Assembly: GCF_000315625.1 (NCBI RefSeq)
Contig: NW_005434521.1
Span: 73,862 to 137,861, forward strand
Origin: Guillardia theta CCMP2712
Taxonomy: Eukaryota; Protista; Cryptophyta
DNA: 64,000 nucleotides
Direction: 5' to 3'
Part shown: positions 30,252 to 47,006 of the stretch, in pieces
Position numbering within the stretch: the stretch's first letter is position 1
Layout of the letters: each line of letters begins with the position of its first letter
Program-made: the position numbers and the translations under genes
The notes under the pieces: model-generated
The model's database searches: none
The model's input: the letters and a program-made list of their open reading frames with translations, nothing else
Told to the model about the DNA's origin: nothing

Positions 30252-33200
30252 ATGAGGATAAGCGTTTTTCTTAAGGTTGCTTTGCTTGCACTGGTCTCTC
30301 CTTCCGTGGATGCGTTCGTAAGCACCTTCATCGCTCGCCGGGCGCTGTTGCCGTCCGCATGCCGAGCAAGATGCCACGCGCGGCGACTGAGTGTGTCGTC
30401 CTCCTTCGATCAGGGCGATAGCAAGAGCGGGGATGACTTGAAAGACGTCTTCTCTCACCCCAGCGCTGATCGACCGCACAAGGCACGGGAGGTGCTATCG
30501 AGGGACGCGGATGTCGGAGCGGACCTGTCTGACATGACCTCAGCGATCGAGCGTGCTCTGAAGCATGCAGACTTGGTGCTGCAGGAGACCTCTCATGCCG
30601 AGTGGATGCTGAGGGAGGCAGAGCAATCGAAGCAGAAGCAGTTCTTCCTGCAGGAGAAAGAAGCAGCCATGAAGCGGCTGCAAGGGGAAGGCAGCGACTA
30701 CCCATCGTTCAACCCGTACATCCAGATGATGCAAGAGTGTGCCGCGAGCGCTTCCAAGGGCCTCGCAGGACGAGTGGAAGCCTTCCAGACGCTCAAGGAC
30801 ATGGAAGGCCTGGGGATCATTCCCAACCTCTCAACCTACAACGCGCTGATGAACGTGCTGGCAAAGGCTGCTGCGAGGGGGAAAGCGACCGTGAAGGATG
30901 GGCAGGAGGTGCTGAAGATGATCAAGACGCGAGGGTTCACCCCCAGTACCATCACCTACACCACGTTCCTGTCTCTGATGGCCAAGTCGGCAAGCTACGG
31001 CCACACGGTGCCTCTCGAAGATGGTTTGAACATCCTTGAGAAGATGAAGGAGCAGGAGCTCGGGATCGACGCGTTCGTGTTTGCCGCGTTGCTGTCACTG
31101 TGCACATATGCGCCCATCAAGGAGGGAGAGAGCAGGATTGAGAAGGGCAAGCAGATACTGGCGTTGATGAGGGAGATGGGGGTTAAGGAGGACATTGTGG
31201 TTTACAACGGTTTCCTCGCCATCTGCGCCAAGTGCAACGACGCGAAACTTGAGGACGGGATGGAGGTGCTTGAGAGCATGAGGGAGAACAAGATCAACCC
31301 AGACACCTACACGTTCGCCACTCTGTTCGACCTCTGCGCCAACATTATGCCAAGGAGGCGGGTGACCATGTCCGATGTACAGAAGATTGTGCAGCAGATG
31401 CAGTCCAACAGGGTGCCTCCTAGCACCACGTTGTACAACTCAATCCTCAAGGTGAGGAGCCGGAGGGGCCGACGGACTTGACTGACTGTGATGGGTCAGG
31501 TGTACGTCAAGGCAGCGAGAAGGAAGTGGATTAGCTCTCGTGAGACAGAGGATGTGATCAAGACGATGGAAAAGTTGGGTCTGAAGTTGGACAGGTAGTG
31601 TTGGTGATTGCGATTGCGATTGTGGTGCTGGTGGAGATTGAGATGATGGAGATGATGATGATCACGCCATGAAGATGTTATCCCACTCCACGACTCTATG
31701 TGATGATGATGATTGGATGTACCAAGTTGGAATAATTCGTCTGAAATGACTCTGCCGTCAAGGATCACTTATGGGACTTGGCTTGACATTCTTCGATATG
31801 CCGCTTTGAATGGGCTTGCAAAGCGAGGCGATGCCAAGAAAGTCATCGACAAGGTACGGGGGGAGGGGAGAAGAGGAGATGGTGGGGGAAGAGGAGGAGA
31901 GTGGGGCGAAGGGGAAAGGGAGGAGAAGGGGGAGACTGTGGAGGCAGAAGTTGATGGCTGCTGGAAGATGAGAGAAAGCGGGATGGCTCCGTCGAGCGAG
32001 ATGTACCATCTTTGGTTGGACGTGATCCTCAAAGAGGCTACGAATGGAGCAGCGACTGTGCGAGACGGCATTGAAGTCGTCAAGTTCATGCAGAAAGTTG
32101 GGCAGGTGACTGATGAGTCGTTGATAGGCTGCTGCTTCTGCTGCTGTGCCGCTCACTCCTGCTCCTGCTGCTGCTCCTGCTGCTGCTCTTGTTCCTGCTG
32201 CTGCTCCTGGTCGCTCACCAGAGCTCGCAGATCCCTTCCTCTCGCGCATTCAATCGCCTCTTGAGCATCGGGGTGAAGGCAGCGAAGAACGGCAAGGATA
32301 GGATCGGTACTACCTGGCACTGCCCCCGTGCTCTCCTTACCCTCTCACCTCAAGATGCCGGGCTGGAGGTGCTGGAGCTGATGAAGACCGAAGAGATCCC
32401 CCTCTCGTCAGTCTCTCTTTCAACCTTCATCCAGATGGCAAAGGCTGAAGGCAGCCAGCGGGCCGTGAGCGAGGCCTGGAAGGTGACACTCCACCCCTCT
32501 TCTATCCTCTCTCCTGCTCCGTTTTTCCTCTATCCTCTTCGTTCGTTGGCCACCCTTGCAACACCCACCTTGTCCCCCCTCCCTTCCTCCCTCTCCAAGT
32601 CCCCCCTCTCTCTGCCTCACTCCGCGTCCCCTCCTCCCTCGCATCCCTCACGCTCACTCGCTTCCCAGCTTTTCATCGCCTCTCCACCGAGCATCAGGAA
32701 CGAGCAAGTGTACACCGCTATGATGTCCACGTTAGTCAGGGCCAAACAGGTGCTTCCTCCTCTGCTGCCTTTCTCTACCAGTGATTTCCCCCTCCCTCCC
32801 TTCAGAGGCACACGGCAAGCTCGCTGCTGGACATGGCGAAGAAGGATGGGCTGAAACCCAACGTCTACATGATCAACTCAGCCATGGGGGCCTGCACCAC
32901 TCCTGAAGACATCCTCAAGGTCCTTCTCCTCTCCTCCTCTCCCTCCCTCTCCCTTCCATTCTCTGCTCTCGCTTCCTCTCCCTGTGATTCTCTGTCCTCC
33001 CTTCCTCTCCCTTCCATTCTCTGCTCCCCTCTCCCCTTTGTCCGCATTCTCCTCTCTCCTCTCTCCTCGTGTCCAACCTGACGCTCTCTAACACCTGGCG
33101 CAGCTTTGGGAGGAGATGCAGGCGAGTGGCCTCGAGAAGGATGCCGTCACCAACAAGTACCTCAAGCTCGCGAGCAAGGGAAGAGCTCCCTTCTCTCAGC

Positions 33201-33403
33201 CGCTCGGTGATCCTCTCCTCCTCGTTTTCGTCCCTCTTGTGCCTCTCCTCGTCCCGTCATCGTCCTCTCCTCCTCCTCCTCGTCCTCTCCCCCCATGTTG
33301 TTCCCTCCTACACGCCCTTGTCAAGACCGGGGCTGACGAGGCTGGTTCAGCAGGGAGAAAGTTTGGGGGAAGACCGAAGGTTCAGAATCAGTCAGAGGAA
33401 TGA
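30252..33403 (+). CDS. Plastid-targeted pentatricopeptide-repeat protein with elongated repeats (multi-exon)
   Basis: Signal peptide ending SVDA-F followed by an R/S-rich transit-like stretch. Tandem repeats of the form TYNALM..M...G..P. Confidence 0.88.
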
Positions 33404-33685
33404 CGCCACACTCGTTCAGCCCCATCGACTTTTCTCGTTCTCCTGACATGACTCGACCTCTTCTATTCTTCATTCTTTTTCCTCACTAGTTTTGTTGAGA
33501 TTACCACCAGCTCGAATGGTGACGAAAAAATAAATGTTCCCGGGACCCATGCTTCTTCTTAGCACCACATCGTCCTCGTCCTCCTNNNNNNNNNNNNNNN
33601 NNNNNNNNNNNNNNNNNNNNNNNNNNNNNNNNNNNNNNNNNNNNNNNNNNNNNNNNNNNNNNNNNNNNNNNNNNNNNNNNNNNNN

Positions 33686-33746
<61 letters not shown>

Positions 33747-34005
33747 TGTCCTCCTCGTCGTCCTCGTCCTTGTCCTCCTTGTCCTACTCGTCGTCGTCGT
33801 CGTCGTCGTCCTCCTGGTTGTCCATACCTCTCGGTTGTGCTCAATTTGTAGCTTCCCATACCCACACCCCCACAAACTGTACCCCCACCCCTTATCATAG
33901 TCTTATTATACCCCCTCTCTCGAAGCAAGCTATAGACCCCTACCCCCTTGTTGACAATTGTTTTTCTACTCTGCAACCCCCCATCGCGTATTCCTCGCAC
34001 CGGCC

Positions 34006-35694
34006 ATGGCGGCCCTGGCGAAGGATGTCGAGCGTTTGCTGAAGAGAAGGAAGATTGAGCGAGAGGATCGGCAGGACATGTTAGACTCCGTCCTCTCCTC
34101 TCTTCAGAAGGCCCTCACATCCCTACAAGGCAGTGAAGGTAAGGAAAACCTTGACACCTCCCTTCCCTTCTCCCTCCTCTCCTCCCCTGCTAACGCTCGA
34201 AGCAACTTGCCAGCGACCAGCTGGGTGGTTGTCTTGAGCTAAGCGCTTGTAGTCTGTCCTCAAACGTTTCCTCTGTGTCTCCCTATCCCTCGACTTGCTC
34301 TCCTCTCCTGTGTAAATCCCTTGCATGTTGAGAGGGAGTTTGTGCTGTAGCTGAAACAACATGGCGCGCGGCGCATGCTGCATCGCCTCGAAACCCTGCA
34401 CCCATGCCCCTGACTGTGACGCCAGATTCGATGCAGTGCGAGACGAAGGAGGGAGGAGAGAAGCGCGCAGAGGCGGAAGAAGTTGCACAAGTCCTGGAGA
34501 CCCTTGAAGGAGAGCTGAGCCTGGAACTCTGGACGGAGAAGCTGGAGGCGGACTACAAGGGGCTGAACATCCAGCTCAACAAGGTGGGCAAGAGCGTCGA
34601 CAAGACCATGCCGCCCGACCTCGAGCGAGCATGCAGGCCGATACAGCATAGCGAGTCACAAGTGAACCAGGTCATCTTTGACCACCTGGTGCGGTCGGGG
34701 AGACTCGAGATAGCTCGGTGCTTCGCCAAGGAGGCAGGGATCCCCTTCAAGGAGGAGGACGTTCAGCCCTACGTCGAGATCTACTGCATCTCCCGGGACA
34801 TCGGCCAGCAGGAGCTCGACAGCGCCTGCAAATTCGCCAGCGTGCATGCTGGCAGGCTGGAGGAAGTGGACAGCGCACTACCCTTTCACCTGGCCAAGAT
34901 GAAGTTCCTGCAGCTGCTGCAGAGAGGCTGCGAGGAGGAGGCGGTAGCGCACGCTCGCAAGAAGTTCCCCTCCTTCTACGAGAGGCACCGCAAGGAAATC
35001 CTCCCGCTCTTCGGCTGCCTGGCCTTCCAACGAAGGGCAGGTGCCTCCCCCTACAAGAGCCTCTTCGATCCCCAGCTGTGGGTCCAGCTATCGCAGCTCT
35101 TCAAGAAGGAGGGCAGCAGGGCCCTGGGCCTGTCGTGCGACACTCCCCTCATCGTCTGCGTGCATGCCGGCATCGCCGCGCTCCCCAAGCTCTACAAGTT
35201 CGCCACCGTCATGACAGAGAAGCTCGGGGAGCTCAGTAGCGGGACGACCCTGCCGATCGAGGTCAAGCTTCACCGCGACTTCCAGTACCATAGCGTCTTC
35301 ATGTGCCCAGTCTCCCGCGAACAGGCGAGAAATCTTCTTCATCTCCTTCCTCCTCTCCTCGCCCCCCCGCCCTCTTACTGCCTCCTCATCTTCCTTCCCT
35401 CGATCCTGCGACAGCATTCTTGACTCAACACTCCTCTGACCTCTTCTCCTTCTTTCCTCCCGGGCTGCTCTTGGATCTCCTCCTGCTCCTGCTCCCGCCC
35501 CCCCTCCCCCCCCCTCTTCCTCCACGTCTGACTCTCCCTAGGCGTCTCATGACAACCCTCCGACCCTCCTGCAGTGCGGGCACGTGCTGTGCGAGCTCTC
35601 GCTCAAGAAGCTCACGAGAAGCGCTGGCCGGCTCAAGTGCCCCTACTGTCCTCGGGAAGTGAGCCTCAGCGGGAGCGTGAGACTGACGTTCTAA
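34006..35694 (+). CDS. RMND5: RMND5/GID2 subunit of the CTLH E3 ligase (LisH-CTLH-CRA-RING)
   Basis: VNQVIFDHLVRSGRLEIARCFAKEAG (LisH), LPFHLAKMKFLQLL, FQYHSVFMCPVSREQ, NPPTLLQCGHV, LKCPYCP. Confidence 0.92.
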
Positions 35695-36589
35695 GGGAGG
35701 AAGCGACAAGGAGGAGATAGTGGACAGATCGATCTTGGCAAGAGTGCAAGGGAAGGGAGAGGAACGGTAAGAAGGAGGAGGGAGGAGGAGGAGGAGGAGG
35801 AGGAGGAGGAGGAGGAAGGAGGAGGAGGAGGAGGAGNNNNNNNNNNNNNNNNNNNNNNNNNNNNNNNNNNNNNNNNNNNNNNNNNNNNNNNNNNNNNNNN
35901 NNNNNNNNNNNNNNNNNNNNNNNNNNNNNNNNNNNNNNNNNNNNNNNNNNNNNNNNNNNNNNNNNNNNNNNNNNNNNNNNNNNNNNNNNNNNNNNNNNNN
36001 NNNNNNNNNNNNNNNNNNNNNNNNNNNNNNNNNNNNNNNNNNNNNNNNNNNNNNNNNNNNNNNNNNNNNNNNNNNNNNNNNNNNNNNNNNNNNNNNNNNN
36101 NNNNNNNNNNNNNNNNNNNNNNNNNNNNNNNNNNNNNNNNNNNNNNNNNNNNNNNNNNNNNNNNNNNNNNNNNNNNNNNNNNNNNNNNNNNNNNNNNNNN
36201 NNNNNNNNNNNNNNNNNNNNNNNNNNNNNNNNNNNNNNNNNNNNNNNNNNNNNNNNNNNNNNNNNNNNNNNNNNNNNNNNNNNNNNNNNNNNNNNNNNNN
36301 NNNNNNNNNNNNNNNNNNNNNNNNNNNNNNNNNNNNNNNNNNNNNNNNNNNNNNNNNNNNNNNNNNNNNNNNNNNNNNNNNNNNNNNNNNNNNNNNNNNN
36401 NNNNNNNNNNNNNNNNNNNNNGGAGTTGATCGTTGATGAAAGCCGAAGATAAGACGGAGGGGAAGTCCAAGGAAGAAGTCTGCATTGAGAGGAAGAAATC
36501 GAAAGAGGTGAAGGAGGCGAGAGTAGGGGAAAGAAGAGAGAGGAGGAGAGCCGCCGGAGTGAGGAGGAGGAGGGAGGAGTGGGAGAAAA

Positions 36590-39173
36590 TCGTCAACACC
36601 GCTAAAGAGGAAGAGGAGATTTCATCATCACCAAGGTAGCTGATGATGATCGTGATGATCTGAACCACTCAATGTCAGTCTCAGGCACCACAATCTCAAT
36701 CCATCCTCCCCTCCTACCAAGTCTCCTCCTTCTTTCGTCTCCCCTACGCTCTCCTCCCCCTCTCCCTCCTCTTGCTCACCTTCGTGGATCCGATCAGTAC
36801 GAGGTTGGAGGCAACGGCAAAGACGACTCCAGCAACGAAAGTCTCAAGAGTTTCCTGATGGCAACGGGGAGGAGGGAGAGGGGAAGGAGAGCGGGTGAGA
36901 AAGAAAGACGGACAAGACGATATGAGAATTACCTTCACGGGGAAAACCCACGACAATCCTCGCGCTTTGATGAAGGGGATGATGGACTGAATGGTGTAAG
37001 CGGGAGAGGTGGAGTGAGTGGAGGGGGAGGGAGGGAGGGAGGGAGGGAGGGAGGGAGGGAGGGAGGGATGGAGGGAGGCAGGAAGGGAAGGGGATGCCAG
37101 GAACAAGATTACCTCGTAGACAAAACTCTCAAGAACACAGAATTCCAACCTCACTCTGACAAGCTCAGGATGAGAAAGAGAGGAACCGAAAACGAGGATA
37201 GAGGAAGGAGACGAAGTTATGTCGAGTCGCAGGGGAGTGAAGGAGCGACGGAGTGAGGGAGTGAGGGAGTGAGGGAGTGAGGAGAGGGATGGGAGGCATG
37301 AGAACGGCGAGGGTGGGAGAGGAGAGCAAAGGATTCTACCTGAGCAAGCTTCCAGCAATCAGAGGAGCATATTCCTTCAAAATGTCAATAAATCACCTCC
37401 TCCTCCTCCTCCTCCCCCACCAAAACAATCCCTCCCCTCCTCCTCCTCCTGCTGCTCTCAGGGCGTCACCTGGTATGTGTCCTTCCCTGCCACCTTGTAC
37501 ACAACCTGCTGGGCAATGCGATAGAAGCGATCGGCGATCTGGTAGCTCACTGTCAGCAGGGCGACAGCTGGGGTTTCTTGTCTTTGCCTGGCAGACAGGA
37601 ACAAACGTGGAAGGGTCCAGCTGCAGGTCACCTAGCTCCTTAAGGTTCAATCCTCCCTGCAGCAAACTTGTTAGAGCTTTGTCCTCCCTCCTTCCACCTC
37701 CTCGCTCGCTCGCTTCCCTCGATCTCCTCCCTCCCTCTCTCCTGCCTGCCTCCCTAAATCTCCTTCCTTTCTCCTATCCCCTCCTGCCTCCTCCATGTAT
37801 CTCCTCCTTCCTCCTCTTCCTCGTCCCCGGTCTCTACACTCCTCTACTTCTCCCTCACCTGAATGTTCGGCATGGCCGGATTCCCCACTGCAGCGTTTGC
37901 CGCTCCCGCGAAACTACCTGGAATCCGAAGTCGGAGAGGAGGAGAAGGAGGAGGAGGAGGAGGAGGAGGAGGAGGAGGAGGAGGAGAGTTACCCCGACGG
38001 GGCTGCTGCTGCCATTTCGACGGCTCCAGTAGCCGCGCTGTTGACAGAGGACAGCATGCTTTCAAGCAGCTCAGGGGAAGGAAGGAACAGGCCAGCAAAA
38101 ATCACTCCGAGCCAAATCTGTGGAGGAATGAGGTGGGGACGGGCCGGAGTAGAGGAAGAGGTAGAGGTAGAGGTAGAGAGGTAGAGGTGGAGGTAGAGGT
38201 AGAGGTAGAGGTGGAGGTAGAGGTAGAGGTAGAGGTAGAGGTAGAGGGAGAGGGAGAGGTGGAGGTGGAGGTGGAGGTAGAGGTAGAGGTAGAGGTAGAG
38301 GTAGAGGTAGAGGGAGAGGGAGAGGGAGAGGGAGAGGTAGAGGTAGAGGTAGAGGTAGAGGTAGAGGAAGAGTTTAGAAGTGGTGGAGGTAGAGATAGAG
38401 GGAGAGTTAGCAGTGGTGATGAGCAAACGGGTCAGGGAAGGAGGGCCAATCTCACCGGCAGCAGCGCTATGGAAGGGAGAGTTTCCCTCTGTTTGTCCAC
38501 CTCCTCCCTTGCCTCCTGGCCGAGTTGCTCATGCGAGAAGGGGTTGCCGAGCAGACTGAAGGGCTTCCCCTCGTCCTCCCTCCTCCTCTGCGCCCGCAGG
38601 GACAGAAGCTGCGGACGACACCGCGGCCTCACTTGAAGATGCGCCGCAGGTCTTTCCATTGCGGTTCTCCGCGGAAGCTGAGCAGCGAAAGGCACATGGA
38701 ACGCCTTCACACCGCAGACGAAGGCTGAAAGAAGTGAGCGTATCAGGCAAAGTGATTCAAAGTGATTCAAAGGGGTTCAATGCCTCTGCTGACATGCAGT
38801 CAAGTCGCACTGATGAGCTTCTCTAGAAGTGATGGATCTACGATCAGCTCTCTAGAGACCATCTGCACACGCCACTACTTTCCCTCCTGTTTCATGTGAA
38901 CAGGTTCCTGTTCCTGTATGAATTCACGCCCTTCTTCCCCGACCCAACTCATCTCGTATCACCTTTCCTGCGACTGCACCTATCCATCTTCTGTTGCTGC
39001 TCATGATGGTCGTGCCGCTCCTCTTCCTCCTCCTGATCCCCCCTCCCGAAACTCCTCCTCCCCTACCCTCCCCTGCCTGCCTGCCTACCTGCCTGCCTGT
39101 TCTCCCTCCCTCCCTCCCTCCTGCTGCTCCCGCTCGGCTTACCTGCCATAAGCCATAGACGTCCTGCCATCAT
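36590..39173 (-). CDS. Putative plastid-targeted multi-pass membrane protein of unknown function; 3' end uncertain near the N-gap
   Basis: The spliced N-terminus MMAGRLWLMAAFVCGVKA-FHVP is a signal peptide plus F. Later exons: LDPSTFVPVCQ | IADRFYRIAQQVVYKVAG | EYAPLIAGSLLR | VRLEFCVLESFVYE | SIIPFIKARGLSWVFPVK | ETLETFVAGVVFAVASNLVLIGSTK | IITIIISYL. Confidence 0.75.
38146..38387. repeat. (GAGGTA/GAGGGA/GAGGTG)n intronic microsatellite
   Basis: Direct hexamer tandem array. Confidence 0.95.
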
Positions 39174-39721
39174 TCCAGTGATCCTTGTGACCCTACCCCC
39201 GCCAATCACCCACCCTCCACCAACACTTTGATTTTCATTTGACACAGACCCCTCCATCACCGCGAAATCATTTATCTTCGAAGGGGGTACTTTGATACAA
39301 GAACCGGTAGTCTTACTACCCCCACCCACAAATGACATAATTTGAATTAGGATTTCTTACACCCCAGCATTTTCGATTTTCTCGTGCCATATTTCAATGT
39401 AATCTCAAGTATTTCAAATTATTCAAGTATTCAGGCCCGCCCCATCATTCCCTGGAACCCATTTCGATTTGAGGGTCATGCATCGAAATGTTTCTCAAAA
39501 TCACGAAATTATCAGGAGATATTTTCAAGTGGGCAGGAAAACTCATGTACCCCATATGAAATCATTGTACCTTACCATGGTCAGGAGTACCCCCTCTATT
39601 CCCACAGTGTACCCCATTTCAGGACCTATTACACACCCATACCTCCCTACCCCCTTTATCTACTACCCCCTTTCCTCCCACCCCCACCCTAGTATCGAAT
39701 CTTACCCCGACAGCAGCCTCC

Positions 39722-40741
39722 ATGGCGAGGCATCGCACGCTCATGATACCGATCATGGCGGCTGTTGCTCTCAGCTTGAGCTCCTCCTCCTCCTTCTCTC
39801 CTCCCCCTCTTCATCTCTCCTCATCTCTTGCCTCACAGTCCCTCTCCCCCCCCCCTCTCAGCTCCTCCTTCTTCCTCTCATCATTATCGTCGACCTCTGT
39901 CCTCCCCGTTGCATCCTCCCGTCCTCCTGCTGGCCTCTCTCTCCCACTCTCTCCTTCAACTGGCTTCGTAAGTCCTGCCATATTTTCCCGATGCTCTGCA
40001 GCCTCCGTGTGCCAAACACAGGGGAAGTTCCATGACAGCCGAAGGAATCCATGGTCGACCTGGCAACGCCCGCCGCCTTCGATTCTGGCCCATCATGGGC
40101 ATCGCAGGGGCGGTGCCTTGTCCCTGTCCTCCAGCAGCTTCTTCCAAGAATTCAGCACCTTCACCTCCATCGAGTTCGCAGCGGGCAATGGCATGCTCGA
40201 CCTGCCGTCTGCCGTAACTGCGGTTGAGAACCTTCTCGAAGCCTCGGAGGCTCAGCCGAGGACGTTGGACTTCATGGCAGCGCTCGGCGCCTGCTACATC
40301 GCGGCAGACAGTCCGAGGGAGGACTCGAGCATGCAGGACATATGGAGGATCGTGAGTTGTGAGGCTGGGCAAGGAGCATGTCGTGCTGACGATGGTGATG
40401 GGTCAGGTGAAGAAGTTCGAGGAAAGGAAGGTGGTTCCGAACAAGATGACCGGAACGCACTTCATCGGGGTAGTTGTCAAGCTCGCTTCTGTTGGCAAGG
40501 CGGGGGTTGCAGACGGTTTTGAGGTGCTGGAGTGGTGTAAGGAGCAAGAAGTGGACACGGACTTCGTGATTATAGCTCAGGTCGTACGAGGAGGCGATGA
40601 TTGTGATTGTGATGGTGATGGTGATGGTGATGGTGATTGTGATTGTGATGGTGATTGTGATGGGGATGGTGATGGTGATGGTGATGGTGATTGTGATGGT
40701 GATGGTGATGATGATGGTGGTGGTGGTGGTGGTGGTGATGG

Positions 40742-40803
<62 letters not shown>

Positions 40804-42415
40804 TTGATGATGATGATGCTGCATGCGATTGCACTGATGTATCGGCTGAGTTTGGTTGGAGCAGATGATGAATGTCTGTGCAAAAGCTGCAGGCTTCGGA
40901 GCAGCATCCTACAAGGAGCTGAGGGAGGTGAGGATAGATATTNNNNNNNNNNNNNNNNNNNNNNNNNNNNNNNNNNNNNNNNNNNNNNNNNNNNNNNNNN
41001 NNNNNNNNNNNNNNNNNNNNNNNNNNNNNNNNNNNNNNNNNNNNNNNNNNNNNNNNNNNNNNNNNNNNNNNNNNNNNTTTCCTTCCCGGTCCCACCATGT
41101 CTCAATTGCAGCTCTCTTTGTTTCCGTCATCCCTCTTGTTCTCTCACCCTTCCTCCGCTCTTCCAGCCCCCCCCCTTTCCCCCCTCCTTTCCCCTCTTCA
41201 CCGCCCTTCCTCTTCTCCTCTTCCTCCTCTCTTCCTTCCCTTCCCTTCCCTCCTCCTCCTCCTCTTCTCTCTCCCTCGTTCTCTCATCCCAGCACTCTCC
41301 CTCGAGCAACTTGACTCGTCTCTCATTCGCGGGCGCAGGTGGTGGAGTGGGCGAAAGGATTAGGGGTCAAGCAGCACCTCAACGTGTTCTCCTTCACCTC
41401 CATGATGGACGGAGTTGCCAAGGCGGCTACGAGGAGGAACGCGACGGTAGAGGACGGAGATGAAGTGATGAAGCTTATGAGCGAGTACGGCATCAGGCCC
41501 AACTCCCGCACCTTCTCCTCCTACTTCACTGTCTGCGCCAACGTGGCAGCGCACGTGAGGGTGAAGACGATGGACCAGGCGAGGATGCGATGGGAGCAGA
41601 TGACGGCGAGCGACTTACAGCCGATGACGGGAACTTTCAACGCGTACCTCAACTGCCTGGCAAAGAACGCCATGTTCCTGGAGCAGCCGCTGGCGGAGGG
41701 GAGAGAAGTAATCAGGATTATGAAGGAAAATGAGCTGGAGAGGAACGAGACGACCTACCTCTCCCTCATCGAGATCATCCAGCGGAGCCTCGTGTCGCAC
41801 CCGAAAGAGGGAAAGAAGAAGGACAGGAACGATGATGCTGATGATGATGATGAGGTGGTAGGTGAGGATCCGGTGGAGGAAGCGTTCGGCGTGGTGGAGG
41901 AGATGAAGGAGGAGGAGATCGAAGTGACCTGTGCCACCTACAACGCCATCACCGCGGTGATCGCAAAGGCAGTGGTGGCAGGGAAGGATAACGTGAAGGA
42001 GAGCCTGGAGCGGGTGGATCGGGAGATGGAGGAGCGGGGGATTTCGCCCGACGTCTCCTCCTTCGCTACGAGAATGGAGATCATCGCGAAACTGACGGGG
42101 AGGGGAAGGGCGACATTCTCCGACGGCATCCAGCTGCTGCAGGAGATGAGGAAGCAGGGGATATCCCCCACCACCAACGTCTTCAACATCCTCATGGACG
42201 TCACGGCCAAGGCGTCGGCCAATGGAAATGTGAGCTTGCGCCTCCTGCTTCTTCTCCTGCTCCTTCTCCTGCTCCTTCTCCTGCTTCTGCTACTGCTACT
42301 GCTACTACTTCTTCTCCTGCCCCTGCTCCTGCTTCTTCTCCTGCTCTTGCTCCTGCCCCTGCTTCTTCTCCTGCTCCTGCTCCTGCTTCTTCTCCTGCTC
42401 CTGCTCCTGCTTCTT

Positions 42416-42451
<36 letters not shown>

Positions 42452-43580
42452 ATCTGTCCCGTGACCTCAGGCTCGACTAGAAGATGGGCTAGGAATCTTG
42501 CAGTGGATGAAATCCTTCGAAACAAAGCCAGGTAAAACTTGTGCTGGTGCTGGTGCTGGTGCTGGTGCTGGTGCTGGTGCTGGTGCTGGTGCTGGTGCTG
42601 GTGCTGGTGCTGGTGCTGGTGCTGGTGCTGGTGCTGGTGCTGGTGCTGGTGCTTCATGCTTATCTCTTGCCCTCTCATCTTGATCGTCTTGTCCGTCCCT
42701 CCCCTCCTCATTCTCCTCTCACTCGTTCTGCCATGACGCTGCTCTCAGATCTCCGCACCTACAACTCGCTCATGGACCTCATGGCCAAGTCCGCCAGGTT
42801 CCGACAGACGCGCGTGCGACATGGGCTGGTGAGGCAGCTGATAGTCCAGCCAAACTGCAGCTGAAACCCCAGCAGGAGGTGCTGGACCGCATCGAGAAGG
42901 ACCAGCTCGAGAGAGACTGTTACACCGTAACGAGCTTCATCCAGCTGGCGAAGGAGGACGGGAGCGTGTCGGGGGTGGAGGAGGCGCGGGAGGTGAAAGG
43001 AGGAGGAGGAGGAGGAGGAGGAGGAGGAGGAGGATGAGGATGAGGATGAGGAGGAGGAGGAGGAGGAAGGGAGAAGAAAGAGAATGTTGGGTGCCATTCA
43101 GTACTTGCTCGCAGGTTTTTTCGCTTTTTCCTCCTCATCTCCGAAGTGACAGAACTTACACCGTCATGATAGCTGCTGAAGCTAGAAGTACCTTCACTCT
43201 CCCTTCTTCACTCTCCCTCCGCCACCCCCTCAGTTTCTCTTCTCTTCTTCGTCTCATTTCCTTGCAGTTGGCAGCGGTAGAGAAGTTGTGGAGAATCTGC
43301 TGAAAGATGCTGTCAGGTCTCGCCCGTTCTCCCTTCTTCCCTGTCTCTCCCTCGATGCTTCTCCTTCCTTTACTTCCGCCTTTCTCCCCCTTCCCCGTTT
43401 GCTTTTCTGAGCTCTGAGCAGCAATGGGATCGCTGTGAACAATTTTATGCTCAACGCCGCCATGTCGGCGTGCAAGACCGCACAGGTGAAGATGCCGAGG
43501 GAGAGGCCAAGAAGAAGAAAGAAAGGAGAGAGAGGATAAGGAGGAGTTAGGCGAAGGCGGGGGGAGGTGATGGAGAGGGT

Positions 43581-43620
<40 letters not shown>

Positions 43621-44258
43621 AATGATGATGATGATCATGATCATGATGATGATCATCATGATGATCATGATGATCATGATGGCGATCATGATGGAGGAGG
43701 AGGTGGAAGAAATTGAATGGCAACAGGATGTTCTTGACCTTCACGCGGAATATGGCAAGGGCGTCGAGATCGACTCGTTTGCACGAGAGTAAGTGGAATG
43801 AGCTTGCATGTTCTTGTTCTTGTCAGCGAGGAGACTGAGGCAGGCTTGCACAGGCTCATCAGGCGAGCAAAGGAGGGCGCTGCGCCAAACCACCGAGAAC
43901 CTCGACAGTGAGGAGGAGGAGGGGGGAGAGGGGGAGGAGAGGAGGGGGGGGAGGGAGGGTCGAAGGGGAGGGGGACGGAAGGTACGGTAGGGAGGGAGGT
44001 TGNNNNNNNNNNNNNNNNNNNNNNNNNNNNNNNNNNNNNNNNNNNNNNNNNNNNNNNNNNNNNNNNNNNNNNNNNNNNNNNNNNNNNNNNNNNNNNNNNN
44101 NNTTGCCCGATACCAGTATCCTGCGTCTGTCGCGAGGGTGGCGCGCTAAGGGGAGGGTCAAGGGGAGGGGGAGGAGTAGGAGGAGGTTGTGGAGGTGGAG
44201 AGGATGGGAAGTGGCTGGTGAAGGAGGGGGGAAGAGGGGGAAGGAGTTGTGTTATTTT
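39722..44258 (+). CDS. Second plastid-targeted PPR protein with elongated repeats (multi-exon; 3' end approximate)
   Basis: Signal peptide MARHRTLMIPIMAAVALSLSSSSS-F with an S-rich transit region. Repeats include NVFSFTSMMDGVAKAATRRNATVEDGDEVMKLMSEYGIRP. The C-terminal NNFMLNAAMSAC resembles NVYMINSAMGAC in the first PPR gene. Confidence 0.88.
42541..42652. repeat. (GTGCTG)n intronic microsatellite
   Basis: Perfect hexamer array after a GTAAAA donor. Confidence 0.95.
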
Positions 44259-44463: not shown

Positions 44464-47006
44464 TCACTTGGCGCGATTGGCAATGTTGCTGTACATCTCG
44501 GAAACCTGACACCATAGATTAGGACAGGAGCGAAGAGGAAGGGAGAAAGTGTGGACACCAAAGCAGAATAAAGAGGAGAGGAGAGGAGAGGAGAGGAGAG
44601 GAGAGGAGAGGAGGATCGAGCTTCTCTTCACCTGGGCATACAAGAAAACACCAGCGATGGCGATGGAGGATCCGATCATGGACTGAGTGCTCATCTTCTG
44701 GCCGAAGATGATCACGGAGGTGATGACGATGACGACCCTCTTGATGTTGTTGCCGATGGAGTGAGTGACGGGGAGACAGCGTCGAGGGCGAGGAAGGCAG
44801 ACTCGTAGTAGAGCTGGAACATGAGCCCTGACAGGATCAGCTGCTTCCACAGGTAGCCCTCGGTGATCATGGCGCCGGCGTGGTCGAGCTTGCCGATGGC
44901 TGCCTTCCTGTGTAGGGGGGGAGGTGAGAGGACGGAGAGGAAGGGGGGGGAGAGAGCGAGGAGAGGGAGTGAGGAGAGTGAGAGCACAGAAAGGAGGGAG
45001 AGGGGAGGGAGAGGAGAGAGAGGTACGAGGAGGGAGATTTGAAGAGGAAACGTGGAGGGAGATGGTGAGAAAGTGCGGAGAGAAGGAAGAGGAGGGGAAG
45101 GGGGAGCAGAAAGGGACGGCTTTAGCGCAAGAGCAGGTGGCAGCTTCTACCATGAAGGATGAGTCCAGGGAGCAAGAGTCCTCCAGCCCTCAACAGCGAC
45201 GACGAAGGGGATGGTGAGGAGAGTGGCTCCGATCTGAAACCCAAGTCATCAGGTCATGCAAGTGAAAGCAAGGGGCGGAAGATGAGTAGGAGGGGAAAGG
45301 AGGGGAGATGAGAAAGAAAGATAGTGAGGGTGGGTGAGGAGTAGGAGGGGAAGGGGAGTAGGTGCAAGGGGATGAAGGAAGGCGCCTCATTACCTGGAGG
45401 ACGCTGAAGGTGTTGGGGCCATCAAGCTTGGCGACCTCACGGATAGAGCGATCGCTCATGGTCTCTGCGGAGTGGCTGGTCAGGAGAGGAAGAAGAAGAC
45501 GAAGAAACAGACTCACTCTTGCCGAGAACGGCGCGGAGAGAGAAGGCGACGTTGGAGACCATGGCAGACACAAACTGCAATGGCAATGAGGAGCCTATTC
45601 CTTCTCCTCCTCCCCTCCTGAGCGAAGCACTCTTCCTACATACTTCCTTCTCTTGACCCTCCTCTAGAACACACCTGGAGCATGTTGAAGTTGACCTCAG
45701 AGGCGGACGCATAGGCGACTCCTCCCATGATCTGCGACCAAGTCAGGAAAAGGATGAAGATGAGAAAAAGATCTCACGGGGATGAGGGTGGCGTACACAA
45801 ACGGATGCTGCCACTTGCCATTGATCAAGCCGCTGGAGCATCGTCAGCACACCTCTATCACCCTCGCTCCTCGCGTCTCCAGCTCCACCCCTTCTCCCTC
45901 CCACCTGAAGATGGCGGTGAAGGCAGGCTCGCACGACTTGAGCACCTGCGTGTCTGTCAACACCCCGCAGAGAGGCGCCGCAGCATCTCACGTGAGCGAA
46001 GCCAAGAGCTCCAGCACCAAAGGCAACATTGCCTCCGACGTTTCCGGCAGCATGCAAGCTGCTCTGCTGGATGATGCTGGGAAGCTGCGGAAGTGAGTCA
46101 GCTAAGGATGCAAGATAATCACAACCAACAAGGCAGCAAGTAGATACAAGAGCAGAACAAACAGGCCAGGCTGGCTACAAGCGCAAGCACAGATACACAG
46201 AGTGATTACCAGCTTGTTGTCGATCTTGGGGGTGTCCCTAACGCCGAGGGCCCAGATGAGAGCAATGTAGGGGATGCCAACACCTGCAGACTCCATGAGC
46301 TCTATATCGCGAGCTATATCTGCCGTCACCGACGCAGGCAAGGGACTGGAGCCATGGCAAGTTCAAGGCATTGAGGGCCTGGTATTGCAATGAGGCTGCA
46401 GGAAAGAGACAGAGCGCGATGGACAGGCACCTTCTTGTTGGCGACATTGTAGAAGATGTTGAAGAAGTACCAGAGGCCGAAGTACGATCCAGCCTTGATC
46501 GACCATGCAGCCTTGCCCTGTGGGGAATGTGAATGTACACAAGTGATGAAGATGGTGACGGTGATCATGAAGTGAATGTGGTTGAGCTGCAGGAGAAGGC
46601 AAGACGGGTGTGGCGATGGGGCGTTGATATACAACTCGTCTTCACGCCCAACATACCGGGATGTTGAACGCGCCAAAGTCGACGGCAACCTCGGACTTGG
46701 AGGGCTTCAAGAAGTTGGCGAAGTAGTTGACAGGAGTCTGGCTCTTGAGGGCCTTCTTGGGCTTCGATGGGGATCCATCCTGTATACAAGCAGTGAGGAA
46801 AGTGAGGACATGAAGCTCTGCATCCTACCTCCAAGGCAAACGCTGTTGACGCGAGGGCGACAACTGCAACGACAAGCAGGGATCGAGAGACGCCCTTCAT
46901 CTAGAGTAGCACGTCATCGTCAGAAGGCAGCATGGGAGAAGGAGCATGAAGGCAGCATGAAATTGATGACGATGTAGCTCAATCCTCTCACGGACTTTCG
47001 CAGCAT
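44464..47006 (-). CDS. Plastid triose-phosphate/phosphate translocator family protein (multi-exon)
   Basis: Signal peptide (SLLVVAVVALASTAFA); YFGLWYFFNIFYNVANKK; LKSCEPAFTAIF; FVSAMVSNVAFSLRAV; PVTHSIGNNIKRVVIVITSVIIF; IGSSIAIAGVFLYAQ. The start is at 47006 (short first exon MLRKS) or 46900. Confidence 0.93.

What the first reader, a model, noticed from the sequence alone, without database searches (positions are those of the whole stretch)
30252..44258. Two paralogous plastid-targeted PPR proteins built from an elongated ~40-aa repeat
Seen: consecutive repeats measure 40, 41, 41, 37 and 40 aa in the first gene (e.g. NLSTYNALMNVLAKAAARGKATVKDGQEVLKMIKTRGFTP). They are mostly 40-41 aa in the second (e.g. 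DVSSFATRMEIIAKLTGRGRATFSDGIQLLQEMRKQGISP). The extra ~5 residues always fall between helix A and helix B, with a shared consensus AKxAxxGxA(T/R)xxDG. Known: canonical P-class PPR motifs are 35 aa, bind RNA one base per repeat and act in organelles. Inference: this is a lineage-specific 40-residue PPR class with altered solenoid geometry or an extra interaction surface, possibly a distinct plastid RNA-regulation family. This is my best candidate for an undescribed system here.
Basis: partly seen in the sequence, partly recalled or inferred. Interest (0 to 1): 0.8.

Follow-up and report, generated by a model that had tools for sequence, protein, structure and literature searches.

The report
Cryptophyte PPR proteins with 40-residue repeats
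Two expressed nuclear genes of the alga Guillardia theta encode probably plastid-directed RNA-binding-type PPR proteins whose repeats are 40 rather than 35 residues long, because of a conserved five-residue expansion between the two helices; this variant is shared by several cryptophyte genera and was not found described in the papers searched.

Summary
The window is Guillardia theta CCMP2712 nuclear DNA. Gene 1 (30252-33403, GUITHDRAFT_147424) has nine consecutive PPR units of 40,41,41,37,40,40,40,40,40 aa. Gene 2 (39722 to about 43911) has ten, all 40-41 aa except one with a 61-aa disordered acidic loop. Against designer PPRs every unit needs a 5-6 residue gap after the 'AKAG' turn. RNA contigs from three runs confirm gene 2's first three introns, place the N gap 40943-41077 inside a spliced intron, and show the loop inserts are not spliced out. 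The other three gaps lie outside both coding regions.

AlphaFold models are confident: helix A 15 aa, loop 6, helix B 13. They superpose on canonical plant PPR models (TM 0.75-0.81) with the loops left out, so altered solenoid geometry is not supported.

A loop-centred profile found only 66 proteins among 1.84 billion representatives. Most have 40-aa spacing, and every named 40-period hit is a cryptophyte (six genera). Loop residues are as conserved as core PPR residues. A signal peptide followed by Phe suggests plastid import.

Verdict: a real, conserved variant of the PPR family, seen so far only in cryptophytes and unnamed metagenome sequences. RNA binding and localisation are inferred, not shown.

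The parts
30252..33403 (+). Gene 1 (GUITHDRAFT_147424), nine exons in my model: 30252-31451, 31500-31594, 31763-31853, 31968-32105, 32231-32306, 32355-32482, 32669-32749, 32806-32919, 33104-33403 (3' end as one ORF; the annotation removes one more intron)
   Evidence: Exon 1 is 100% identical to P0001. Splice sites were read from the DNA. At least 10 probable RNA runs hold 0.55-0.58 of its words.
30252..30317 (+). Gene 1 signal peptide (21 aa, c-region V-D-A) followed by Phe at +1
   Evidence: Read from the sequence; hydrophobic core with 12-aa Kyte-Doolittle mean 2.48. The Phe rule for cryptophyte stromal import is from my knowledge of the literature (Gould et al. 2006); it was not checked here.
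30828..32407 (+). Gene 1 array of nine PPR units of 40,41,41,37,40,40,40,40,40 aa (residues 193-551; spans four introns)
   Evidence: AlphaFold pLDDT 87 for residues 150-480.
32231..32306 (+). Gene 1 exon 5 as I model it. The public annotation starts this exon later and retains the next intron, which breaks the 40-aa register.
   Evidence: GT/AG sites and reading phase. My model restores a 40-aa unit that aligns with the corresponding units of the Baffinella and Teleaulax orthologues. Not verified by RNA.
39709..43911 (+). Gene 2. RNA contigs begin at 39709 and the ATG is at 39722. Exons: 39722-40351, 40407-40580, 40865-40927, 41339-42229 (RNA-confirmed), then modelled 42471-42531, 42749-42828, 42876-42992, 43081-43114, 43268-43316, 43419-43485, 43703-43788, 43827-43911. 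An alternative stop is TAA at 43790-43792.
   Evidence: Joints 40351|40407, 40580|40865 and 40927|41339 appear in contigs of three runs. Later exons come from splice signals and the paralogue/orthologue pattern only.
39722..39796 (+). Gene 2 signal-peptide-like N-terminus (hydrophobic core, Ser-rich c-region) followed by Phe
   Evidence: The metagenomic orthologue P0091 has a clear A-V-A-A|F-A-P junction.
40443..41746 (+). Gene 2 units 0-4 (40, 40, 2-aa linker + 40, 41, 40 aa), spanning introns 2 and 3
   Evidence: The unit that crosses the N-gap intron reads through in register.
40928..41338 (+). Gene 2 intron 3 (GT..AG, 411 nt as assembled), containing the assembly gap 40943-41077
   Evidence: Spliced out in RNA contigs of X4, X9 and X12 with no letters between the two sides.
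41747..41929 (+). Gene 2 unit with a 61-aa length: an acidic insert in the helix A-B loop
   Evidence: AlphaFold pLDDT below 50 for residues 154-174 of the exon translation. The orthologue P0091 also has a long, different insert here.
41930..42917 (+). Gene 2 units 5-8 (41, 40, 40, 40 aa); the last two span unverified introns
   Evidence: The same lengths occur in orthologues P0002 and P0091.

Best explanation
Both genes encode members of a PPR subfamily seen so far only in cryptophytes and unnamed metagenome sequences. It derives from ordinary P-type pentatricopeptide repeats by a fixed expansion of about five residues at the end of helix A and in the A-B turn. This gives a 40-residue unit: helix A about 15 aa, loop about 6, helix B about 13, loop about 6.

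Shown: the genes are real, spliced and expressed, and the 40-aa period and loop motif are conserved across cryptophyte genera.

Predicted: the helices stack as in canonical PPR solenoids.

Inferred: the proteins enter the ER through a signal peptide and, because Phe follows the cleavage site, are passed on to the plastid stroma. There they bind single-stranded plastid RNA one nucleotide per unit through residue 5 and the last residue of each unit, acting like P-class PPR proteins in transcript stabilisation, processing or translation. The conserved, partly basic loops (R/H at position 17, K/R at 19) form a ridge along one edge of the solenoid. That ridge either stiffens the array or offers a second contact surface for the RNA backbone or a partner protein.
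For: - Pfam PPR_2, PPR_3 and PPR_long score well above their cut-offs on both genes.
- Gene 1's first exon gives E 6e-53 to designer PPR10, with one 5-6 aa gap per repeat.
- RNA contigs confirm gene 2's splicing and an unspliced repeat exon.
- AlphaFold gives pLDDT 87 and 82, pTM 0.80 and 0.79, with regular A-loop-B units.
- The top Foldseek PDB hits are PPR proteins.
- ESM Atlas superposition on plant PPR models gives TM 0.75-0.81 over about 295 of 331 residues.
- The loop-centred profile has 66 hits in 1.84e9 proteins, mostly with 40-aa spacing, and the named 40-period ones are all cryptophytes.
- Orthologous units keep the same lengths at 32-41% identity.
- Loop residues are 61-79% conserved.
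- Residue 5 and the last residue are N/D in 45% of units, with N/S, T/D, T/N and S/D also present, as in canonical PPR code pairs.
- A signal peptide followed by Phe occurs in five of six full-length N-termini.
Against: - No RNA-binding, localisation or target data exist.
- Many units carry non-code residues at position 5 (A, G, H, L).
- No targeting predictor was run, and the cleavage site of gene 2 is ambiguous.
- One subgroup (P0005) lacks the Phe.
- The structure models are single-sequence AlphaFold predictions, which may be biased towards canonical PPR geometry.
- The profile was trained on cryptophyte loops, so long-loop PPRs with different loop sequences in other lineages would be missed.
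- Most hits are unnamed metagenome proteins.
Confidence: 0.7

Rival explanations
1. The proteins are structural or protein-binding solenoid subunits, for example of the plastid ribosome or the plastid RNA polymerase complex, as rPPR proteins and pTAC2/PAP2 are in plants. On this reading the conserved loops are a protein-protein interface rather than part of an RNA reader.
For: - PAP2/pTAC2 and mitoribosomal PPR proteins are among the sequence and fold matches.
- Many units have non-code residues at position 5 (and the units).
- The loop motif is as conserved as the core, which suits a fixed interface.
Against: - N/D, N/S, T/D and T/N pairs dominate the code positions.
- Those positions are largely kept between gene 2 and its orthologue P0091 at about 41% overall identity.
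- The best matches are RNA-binding P-type and designer PPRs.
Confidence: 0.17
2. The proteins work in another compartment: the mitochondrion, or the periplastidial compartment where they would act on nucleomorph transcripts.
For: - PPR proteins are commonly mitochondrial.
- The P0005 subgroup has Gln rather than Phe after its signal peptide, plus an L-T-L-R-G-G motif. An earlier unchecked note of this scan (s1-431675) links that motif to periplastidial proteins.
Against: - Gene 1, gene 2 and relatives P0086, P0091 and P0016 have a hydrophobic signal peptide followed directly by Phe. In cryptophytes this marks stromal import (my knowledge of Gould et al. 2006; not checked here).
- Mitochondrial presequences lack such a hydrophobic core.
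Confidence: 0.1
3. It is not a PPR variant but a member of another helical-repeat family of about 38-40 aa (OPR, HPR, SEL1/TPR-like), or the period is an artefact of gene modelling.
For: OPR repeats are quoted as 38-40 aa (abstract of PMC8635915, listed), so the length alone fits.
Against: - Only PPR families match in Pfam at E <= 0.1 among repeat families.
- The units carry the PPR signature (T3, Y/F4, N5 ... G36, P39, D40) and align to PPR with a single internal gap.
- The period lies within single exons confirmed by RNA.
Confidence: 0.03

Closest known systems
P-class pentatricopeptide repeat proteins (e.g. maize PPR10; designer dPPR10, PDB 6een)
   Same: - Tandem helix-turn-helix units with the PPR signature residues.
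- Strong Pfam PPR_2/PPR_3 matches.
- The same predicted solenoid stacking (TM 0.75-0.81).
- Asn/Thr/Ser at position 5 and Asp/Asn/Ser at the last position.
- N-terminal organelle-targeting leader.
   Different: - The unit is 40 aa rather than 35.
- Helix A is about two residues longer and the A-B turn about three residues longer.
- The turn carries its own conserved motif (A15, G18, A20, S/T21, D24, G25).
- No solved structure matches the loop-containing half of the unit. The best PDB hit to the loop-centred profile has E 0.02 and covers the helix B half only.
PLS-class PPR length variants (L 35-36 aa, S 31-32 aa)
   Same: They show that PPR units tolerate fixed length variants that define subclasses.
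   Different: - PLS variants differ by 1-4 residues, alternate in P-L-S triplets, are land-plant RNA-editing factors and carry E/DYW tails.
- Here a single 40-aa type repeats uniformly, with no E/DYW domain.
Octotricopeptide (OPR, 38-40 aa) and heptatricopeptide (HPR, 37 aa) repeat proteins
   Same: Organellar alpha-solenoid proteins with repeats longer than 35 aa, expanded in particular algal or alveolate lineages.
   Different: - Those are separate sequence families.
- The cryptophyte units match PPR models and keep PPR signature residues.
- No OPR- or HPR-type match was seen. No dedicated OPR or HPR profile was available to test.

Membership tests
PPR (pentatricopeptide repeat) family | Significant match to curated PPR profiles | tested here: met
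   Gene 1 exon 1: PPR_3 84 bits (cut-off 25), PPR_2 77 bits (30), PPR_long 58 bits (27). Gene 2 main exon: PPR_2 89, PPR_3 68, PPR_long 44.
PPR (pentatricopeptide repeat) family | Tandem repeats of 35 residues | tested here: not met
   The tandem arrangement is met, but the period is 40-41 aa. 180 of 217 family units are 40 aa and none is 35. It is therefore filed as a variant, not a canonical member.
PPR (pentatricopeptide repeat) family | Each unit is an antiparallel helix A / helix B pair stacked into a right-handed solenoid like known PPR structures | tested here: met
   AlphaFold models have pLDDT 87 and 82 with a regular A-loop-B pattern. Top Foldseek PDB hits are all PPR proteins. TM is 0.75-0.81 to plant PPR models. 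This is prediction only.
PPR (pentatricopeptide repeat) family | Nucleotide-specifying residues at position 5 and the last position (N/D, N/S, T/D, T/N ...) | tested here: inconclusive
   N/D makes up 45% of the 86 units, and the other canonical pairs are present. About a quarter of units have A, G, H, V or L at position 5.
PPR (pentatricopeptide repeat) family | Sequence-specific binding of single-stranded organellar RNA | not testable with these tools
   No binding data. The plastid, nucleomorph and mitochondrial genomes of G. theta were not available to scan.
PPR (pentatricopeptide repeat) family | Organelle targeting | tested here: inconclusive
   Five of six full-length N-termini have a signal peptide followed by Phe. 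No predictor or experiment was used.
OPR / HPR repeat families | 38-40 aa (OPR) or 37 aa (HPR) units with their own consensus, not matching PPR profiles | tested here: not met
   The units match PPR profiles and align to PPR with one internal gap. The length alone resembles OPR. No OPR or HPR profile was on hand for a direct test.
PLS-class / DYW editing factors | Alternating P-L-S units and a C-terminal E/DYW domain | tested here: not met
   The unit type is uniform, and Pfam finds no DYW or E domain.

The most novel reading that the evidence does not exclude
The 40-residue unit is a functionally distinct PPR class of Cryptista. Its conserved, basic A-B loop ridge changes how RNA is read (for example backbone clamping, a different nucleotide register, or recognition of structured RNA) or recruits a dedicated partner. 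It would define a plastid RNA-regulation system with no counterpart in plants, and a new scaffold for designer RNA binders.
Probability: 0.2. Interest if true: 0.7.

Novelty: new variant of a known kind. Interest (0 to 1): 0.5.

Why it matters
PPR proteins are the main sequence-specific RNA readers of organelles and a platform for designer RNA-binding proteins, and nearly all knowledge of them comes from 35-residue plant repeats. A recent review states that helical 'tricopeptide' repeats outside 34-38 residues are apparently missing (PMC12691811).

A uniform 40-residue PPR unit is a natural experiment on how much the A-B turn can grow without disturbing the solenoid. It has a loop as conserved as the core and has been kept across cryptophyte genera. 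It also points to a small, tractable set of nuclear factors (at least five groups in the tree) for plastid gene expression in a secondary-plastid alga, where such factors are almost unstudied.

If the loops only decorate a normal PPR, the finding is a modest addition to the family's known variation.

Tried and rejected
- **Word-index protein searches.** They found only the gene itself and one metagenome fragment, so they were too insensitive for this repeat family and were not used as evidence of absence.
- **Full-length or whole-unit profile for the exhaustive search.** Rejected because a local calibration showed a designer PPR of ten canonical units scoring 260 bits against the whole-unit profile. 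Trimming the profile to unit positions 6-36 cut that to 50 bits while an independent relative kept 96. That profile (A2) was used.
- **Read laying on the whole of gene 2.** Only 39600-42535 could be laid, so exons after 42230 and all of gene 1 lack direct read evidence.
- **Raw RNA run X24.** It laid no reads with about 6% of the run sampled, which is no test.
- **ESM Atlas feature search for P0005.** It returned only generic diatom PPR clusters and did not identify its organism.
- **Identifying P0005's contig through a neighbouring glycosyltransferase.** The single named hit was the cryptophyte Teleaulax at 48% identity. This is suggestive only.
- **OPR, HPR and TPR/SEL1 readings.** Rejected on Pfam and alignment evidence.
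- **Altered solenoid geometry.** Rejected.
- **Hits with other periods.** Three hits with a 32-aa period (one named HemY) and one pea PPR with a 35-aa period are not members.
Full report
**Identity and gene models**

Exon 1 of the first gene (window:30252-31451:+) is 100% identical to GUITHDRAFT_147424 of Guillardia theta CCMP2712. That protein is 692 aa and annotated only as a hypothetical protein with a PROP1-like PPR domain. The window is therefore cryptophyte nuclear DNA.

I rebuilt both genes from GT/AG sites and reading phase.
- Gene 1 spans 30252-33403 on the + strand, in nine exons.
- Gene 2 spans 39722 to about 43911 on the + strand, in up to twelve exons. An alternative stop lies at 43790-43792.

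My gene 1 model differs from the annotation at exon 5 (32231-32306, then 32355). The annotation starts that exon later and retains the following intron. My version restores a complete 40-aa unit, and that unit aligns with the corresponding units of the Baffinella and Teleaulax orthologues.

The 6 kb between the two genes holds a CTLH/CRA-domain gene. It is not part of the finding. A six-frame scan of the whole window with the unit HMM finds such units only in these two genes.

**Assembly gaps**
- RNA contigs of three runs (X4, X9, X12) laid on 39600-42535 show joints at 40351|40407, 40580|40865 and 40927|41339. All are GT..AG, with no letters between the sides.
- The gap at 40943-41077 is therefore inside intron 3 of gene 2. 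The PPR unit that crosses this intron reads through in register.
- The contigs also cover exon 41339-42229 without interruption, so the loop inserts are not removed from the transcript.
- The gap at 33586-33685 begins 183 nt after gene 1's stop.
- The gap at 35837-36421 is intergenic with respect to the two PPR genes.
- The gap at 44003-44102 is downstream of both candidate stops of gene 2.
- Exons of gene 2 after 42230 could not be checked.
- Gene 1 is held at 0.55-0.58 of its sampled words by at least ten probable RNA assemblies. That share is about its exonic fraction.

**The observation**
- Gene 1 has nine back-to-back units of 40,41,41,37,40,40,40,40,40 aa.
- Gene 2 has units of 40, 40, 40 (after a 2-aa linker), 41, 40, then one of 61 aa, then 41, 40, 40, 40.
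- phmmer against PDB gives E 6e-53 to designer dPPR10. In every repeat it opens a 5-6 residue gap in the designer sequence just after the 'AKAG' turn.
- Pfam finds PPR_2, PPR_3 and PPR_long far above threshold and no other repeat family.
- The two proteins are collinear but only 23% identical over 549 aa, E 1e-41.

**Structure**
- Single-sequence AlphaFold models of gene 1 residues 150-480 and of gene 2's main exon are confident: pLDDT 87 and 82, pTM 0.80 and 0.79.
- Both show the same unit: helix A of 15-16 residues, a 5-6 residue loop, helix B of 13-14 residues, and a 6-residue loop.
- Compared with designer PPRs, helix A gains about two residues and the turn about three.
- The 61-aa unit of gene 2 carries a disordered acidic insert in that same loop.
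- The top Foldseek PDB hits are all PPR proteins: designer PPRs, PPR10 and pTAC2/PAP2.
- Against ESM Atlas models of plant PPR proteins, 293-300 of 331 residues superpose at rmsd 2.2-3.3 A, TM 0.75-0.81. The roughly 35 unaligned residues correspond to the eight loops.
- The predicted helix stacking is thus canonical, and the insert bulges from one edge.
- No solved structure matches the loop-containing part of the unit. The best hit has E 0.02 and covers the helix B half only.

**Distribution**

A whole-unit profile would have been swamped by plant PPRs: a canonical designer array scored 260 bits. I therefore built a 31-column profile of unit positions 6-36 from 19 units (alignment A2). It scores the designer array at 50 bits and an independent metagenome relative at 96 bits.
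- Against 1.84 billion representative proteins it found 66 proteins with E <= 1e-3 and 26 with E <= 1e-10.
- Most have unit spacings of 40, or multiples of 40 where a unit was missed.
- Across all retrieved members, 180 of 217 units are 40 aa, 23 are 41, 9 are 42, 4 are 37 and none is 35.
- Every named 40-period hit is a cryptophyte: Guillardia (also GUITHDRAFT_111964), Hanusia, Baffinella, Hemiselmis, Chroomonas and Teleaulax.
- The only other named hits are one pea PPR with a 35-aa period and one 'HemY' protein with a 32-aa period.
- The abundant GC-rich metagenome group (P0004, P0005) sits on a compact contig. The neighbouring glycosyltransferase there has Teleaulax as its only named relative, at 48% identity.
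- A maximum-likelihood tree separates a gene 1 clade (Guillardia, Baffinella, Teleaulax; support 99/99), a gene 2 clade (100/100), a third clade containing GUITHDRAFT_111964, Hemiselmis and Chroomonas (99/98), and further groups.
- The two genes of the window are therefore old paralogues that have stayed neighbours. Repeat proteins align poorly, so the tree is supporting evidence only.
- Orthologous units keep their individual lengths. The 41-41-37 run of gene 1 recurs in Baffinella. The 2-aa linker, the 41-aa unit and the long-loop unit of gene 2 recur in P0091.

**Conservation and the RNA code**

Over 86 distinct 40-aa units the consensus is roughly T3, Y/F4, N5, L7, A12, K13, A15, G18, A20, S/T21, D24, G25, V28, L29, M32, G36, P39, D40.
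- Loop residues are conserved at 61-79%, as much as the classical core residues.
- Positions 17 and 19 are mostly basic.
- Position 5 and the last position form N/D in 45% of units, with N/S, S/D, T/D, T/N and N/N also present. These are the pairs that specify nucleotides in canonical PPRs (Barkan et al. 2012, PMC3420917, listed; the code itself is from my knowledge).
- Between gene 2 and P0091, position 5 is identical in 7 of 9 units and the last position in 6 of 9, at about 41% overall identity (read). This fits a conserved RNA target but is a small sample.

**Targeting**
- Gene 1 starts with a classical signal peptide ending V-D-A, followed by Phe.
- Gene 2 has a hydrophobic core, a Ser-rich stretch and then Phe.
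- Teleaulax P0086 (A-S-G|F), P0091 (A-V-A-A|F-A-P) and Baffinella P0016 (C-G-S|F) show the same pattern.
- In cryptophytes a Phe at +1 of the transit peptide marks stromal proteins, and its absence marks periplastidial ones. This is from my knowledge of Gould et al. 2006 and was not checked here.
- P0005 lacks the Phe and carries L-T-L-R-G-G at residues 54-59. An earlier unchecked note of this scan links that motif to periplastidial proteins.

**Literature**
- No paper in the searched library mentions these genes or a 40-residue PPR class.
- A 2025 review states that repeats outside 34-38 aa are apparently missing.
- A 2026 structural review lists only 31-36 aa PPR variants.

**Verdict**

The thing is real, expressed and conserved, and it is best described as a 40-residue variant of the P-type PPR, known so far only from cryptophytes and unnamed metagenome sequences. 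Function (plastid RNA binding) and the role of the loop ridge are inferred. The geometry claim is not supported.

Noticed in passing
window 34404-35420 (+): An ORF between the two PPR genes encodes a CTLH/CRA-domain protein (Pfam PF10607, E 3e-28), probably a subunit of a GID/CTLH-type ubiquitin ligase. It is unrelated to the finding.
   Followed up: partly
window 32106-32354 (gene 1 introns 4-5 and exon 5): The public model GUITHDRAFT_147424 appears mis-spliced here. It omits 16 residues of a PPR unit and translates 17 residues of intron. The corrected exon (32231-32306) restores the 40-aa register and matches the orthologues.
   Followed up: partly
P0073 (NCBI MGB1592134.1), member of the P0005 cluster: A 963-aa member of this eukaryotic PPR group is deposited as a protein of a 'Promethearchaeia archaeon' MAG. 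The group's contigs look like a compact GC-rich (about 62%) eukaryote, possibly a cryptophyte relative, so this is probably a mis-binned eukaryotic contig in an Asgard MAG.
   Followed up: partly
P0005 residues 54-59 (locus L001:352-3735): All listed full-length members of the P0005 cluster carry L-T-L-R-G-G about 35 residues after a signal peptide that is not followed by Phe. This resembles the ubiquitin-tail leader motif reported by another note of this scan. The subgroup might be periplastidial.
   Followed up: partly
window 40590-40830, 42240-42450, 42541-42653, 43000-43060, 43570-43690: The introns of gene 2 are filled with long trinucleotide and hexanucleotide microsatellites (GAT/GGT, CTC/CTG, GCT/GGT, GAG, GAT). 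One blocked read mapping. Confirmed introns elsewhere in gene 2 can be as short as 55 nt, and gene 1 has modelled introns of 48 nt.
   Followed up: no
P0013, P0015, P0053 (hits): Three proteins hit by the loop-centred profile have a strict 32-aa period; one is named 'HemY'. They are a different helical-repeat type and not part of the family.
   Followed up: no
runs X17 and X20: Two freshwater or lake metagenome assemblies hold 0.25 and 0.06 of gene 1's sampled words, which is unexpected for a marine strain. This could be a close freshwater relative or carry-over.
   Followed up: no
record 1 of run X12: The RNA contig covering gene 2 has 1954 nt beyond position 42230, far more than the roughly 580 nt of coding sequence I model there. 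The cause could be a long 3' UTR, retained introns, or fusion with the convergent transcript at 44464-45153 (minus-strand ORF). Unresolved.
   Followed up: no
P0019 (Baffinella KAJ1467429.1): The Baffinella orthologue of gene 1 contains several directly duplicated 15-25 aa segments inside units. These look like assembly or gene-model artefacts rather than biology.
   Followed up: no
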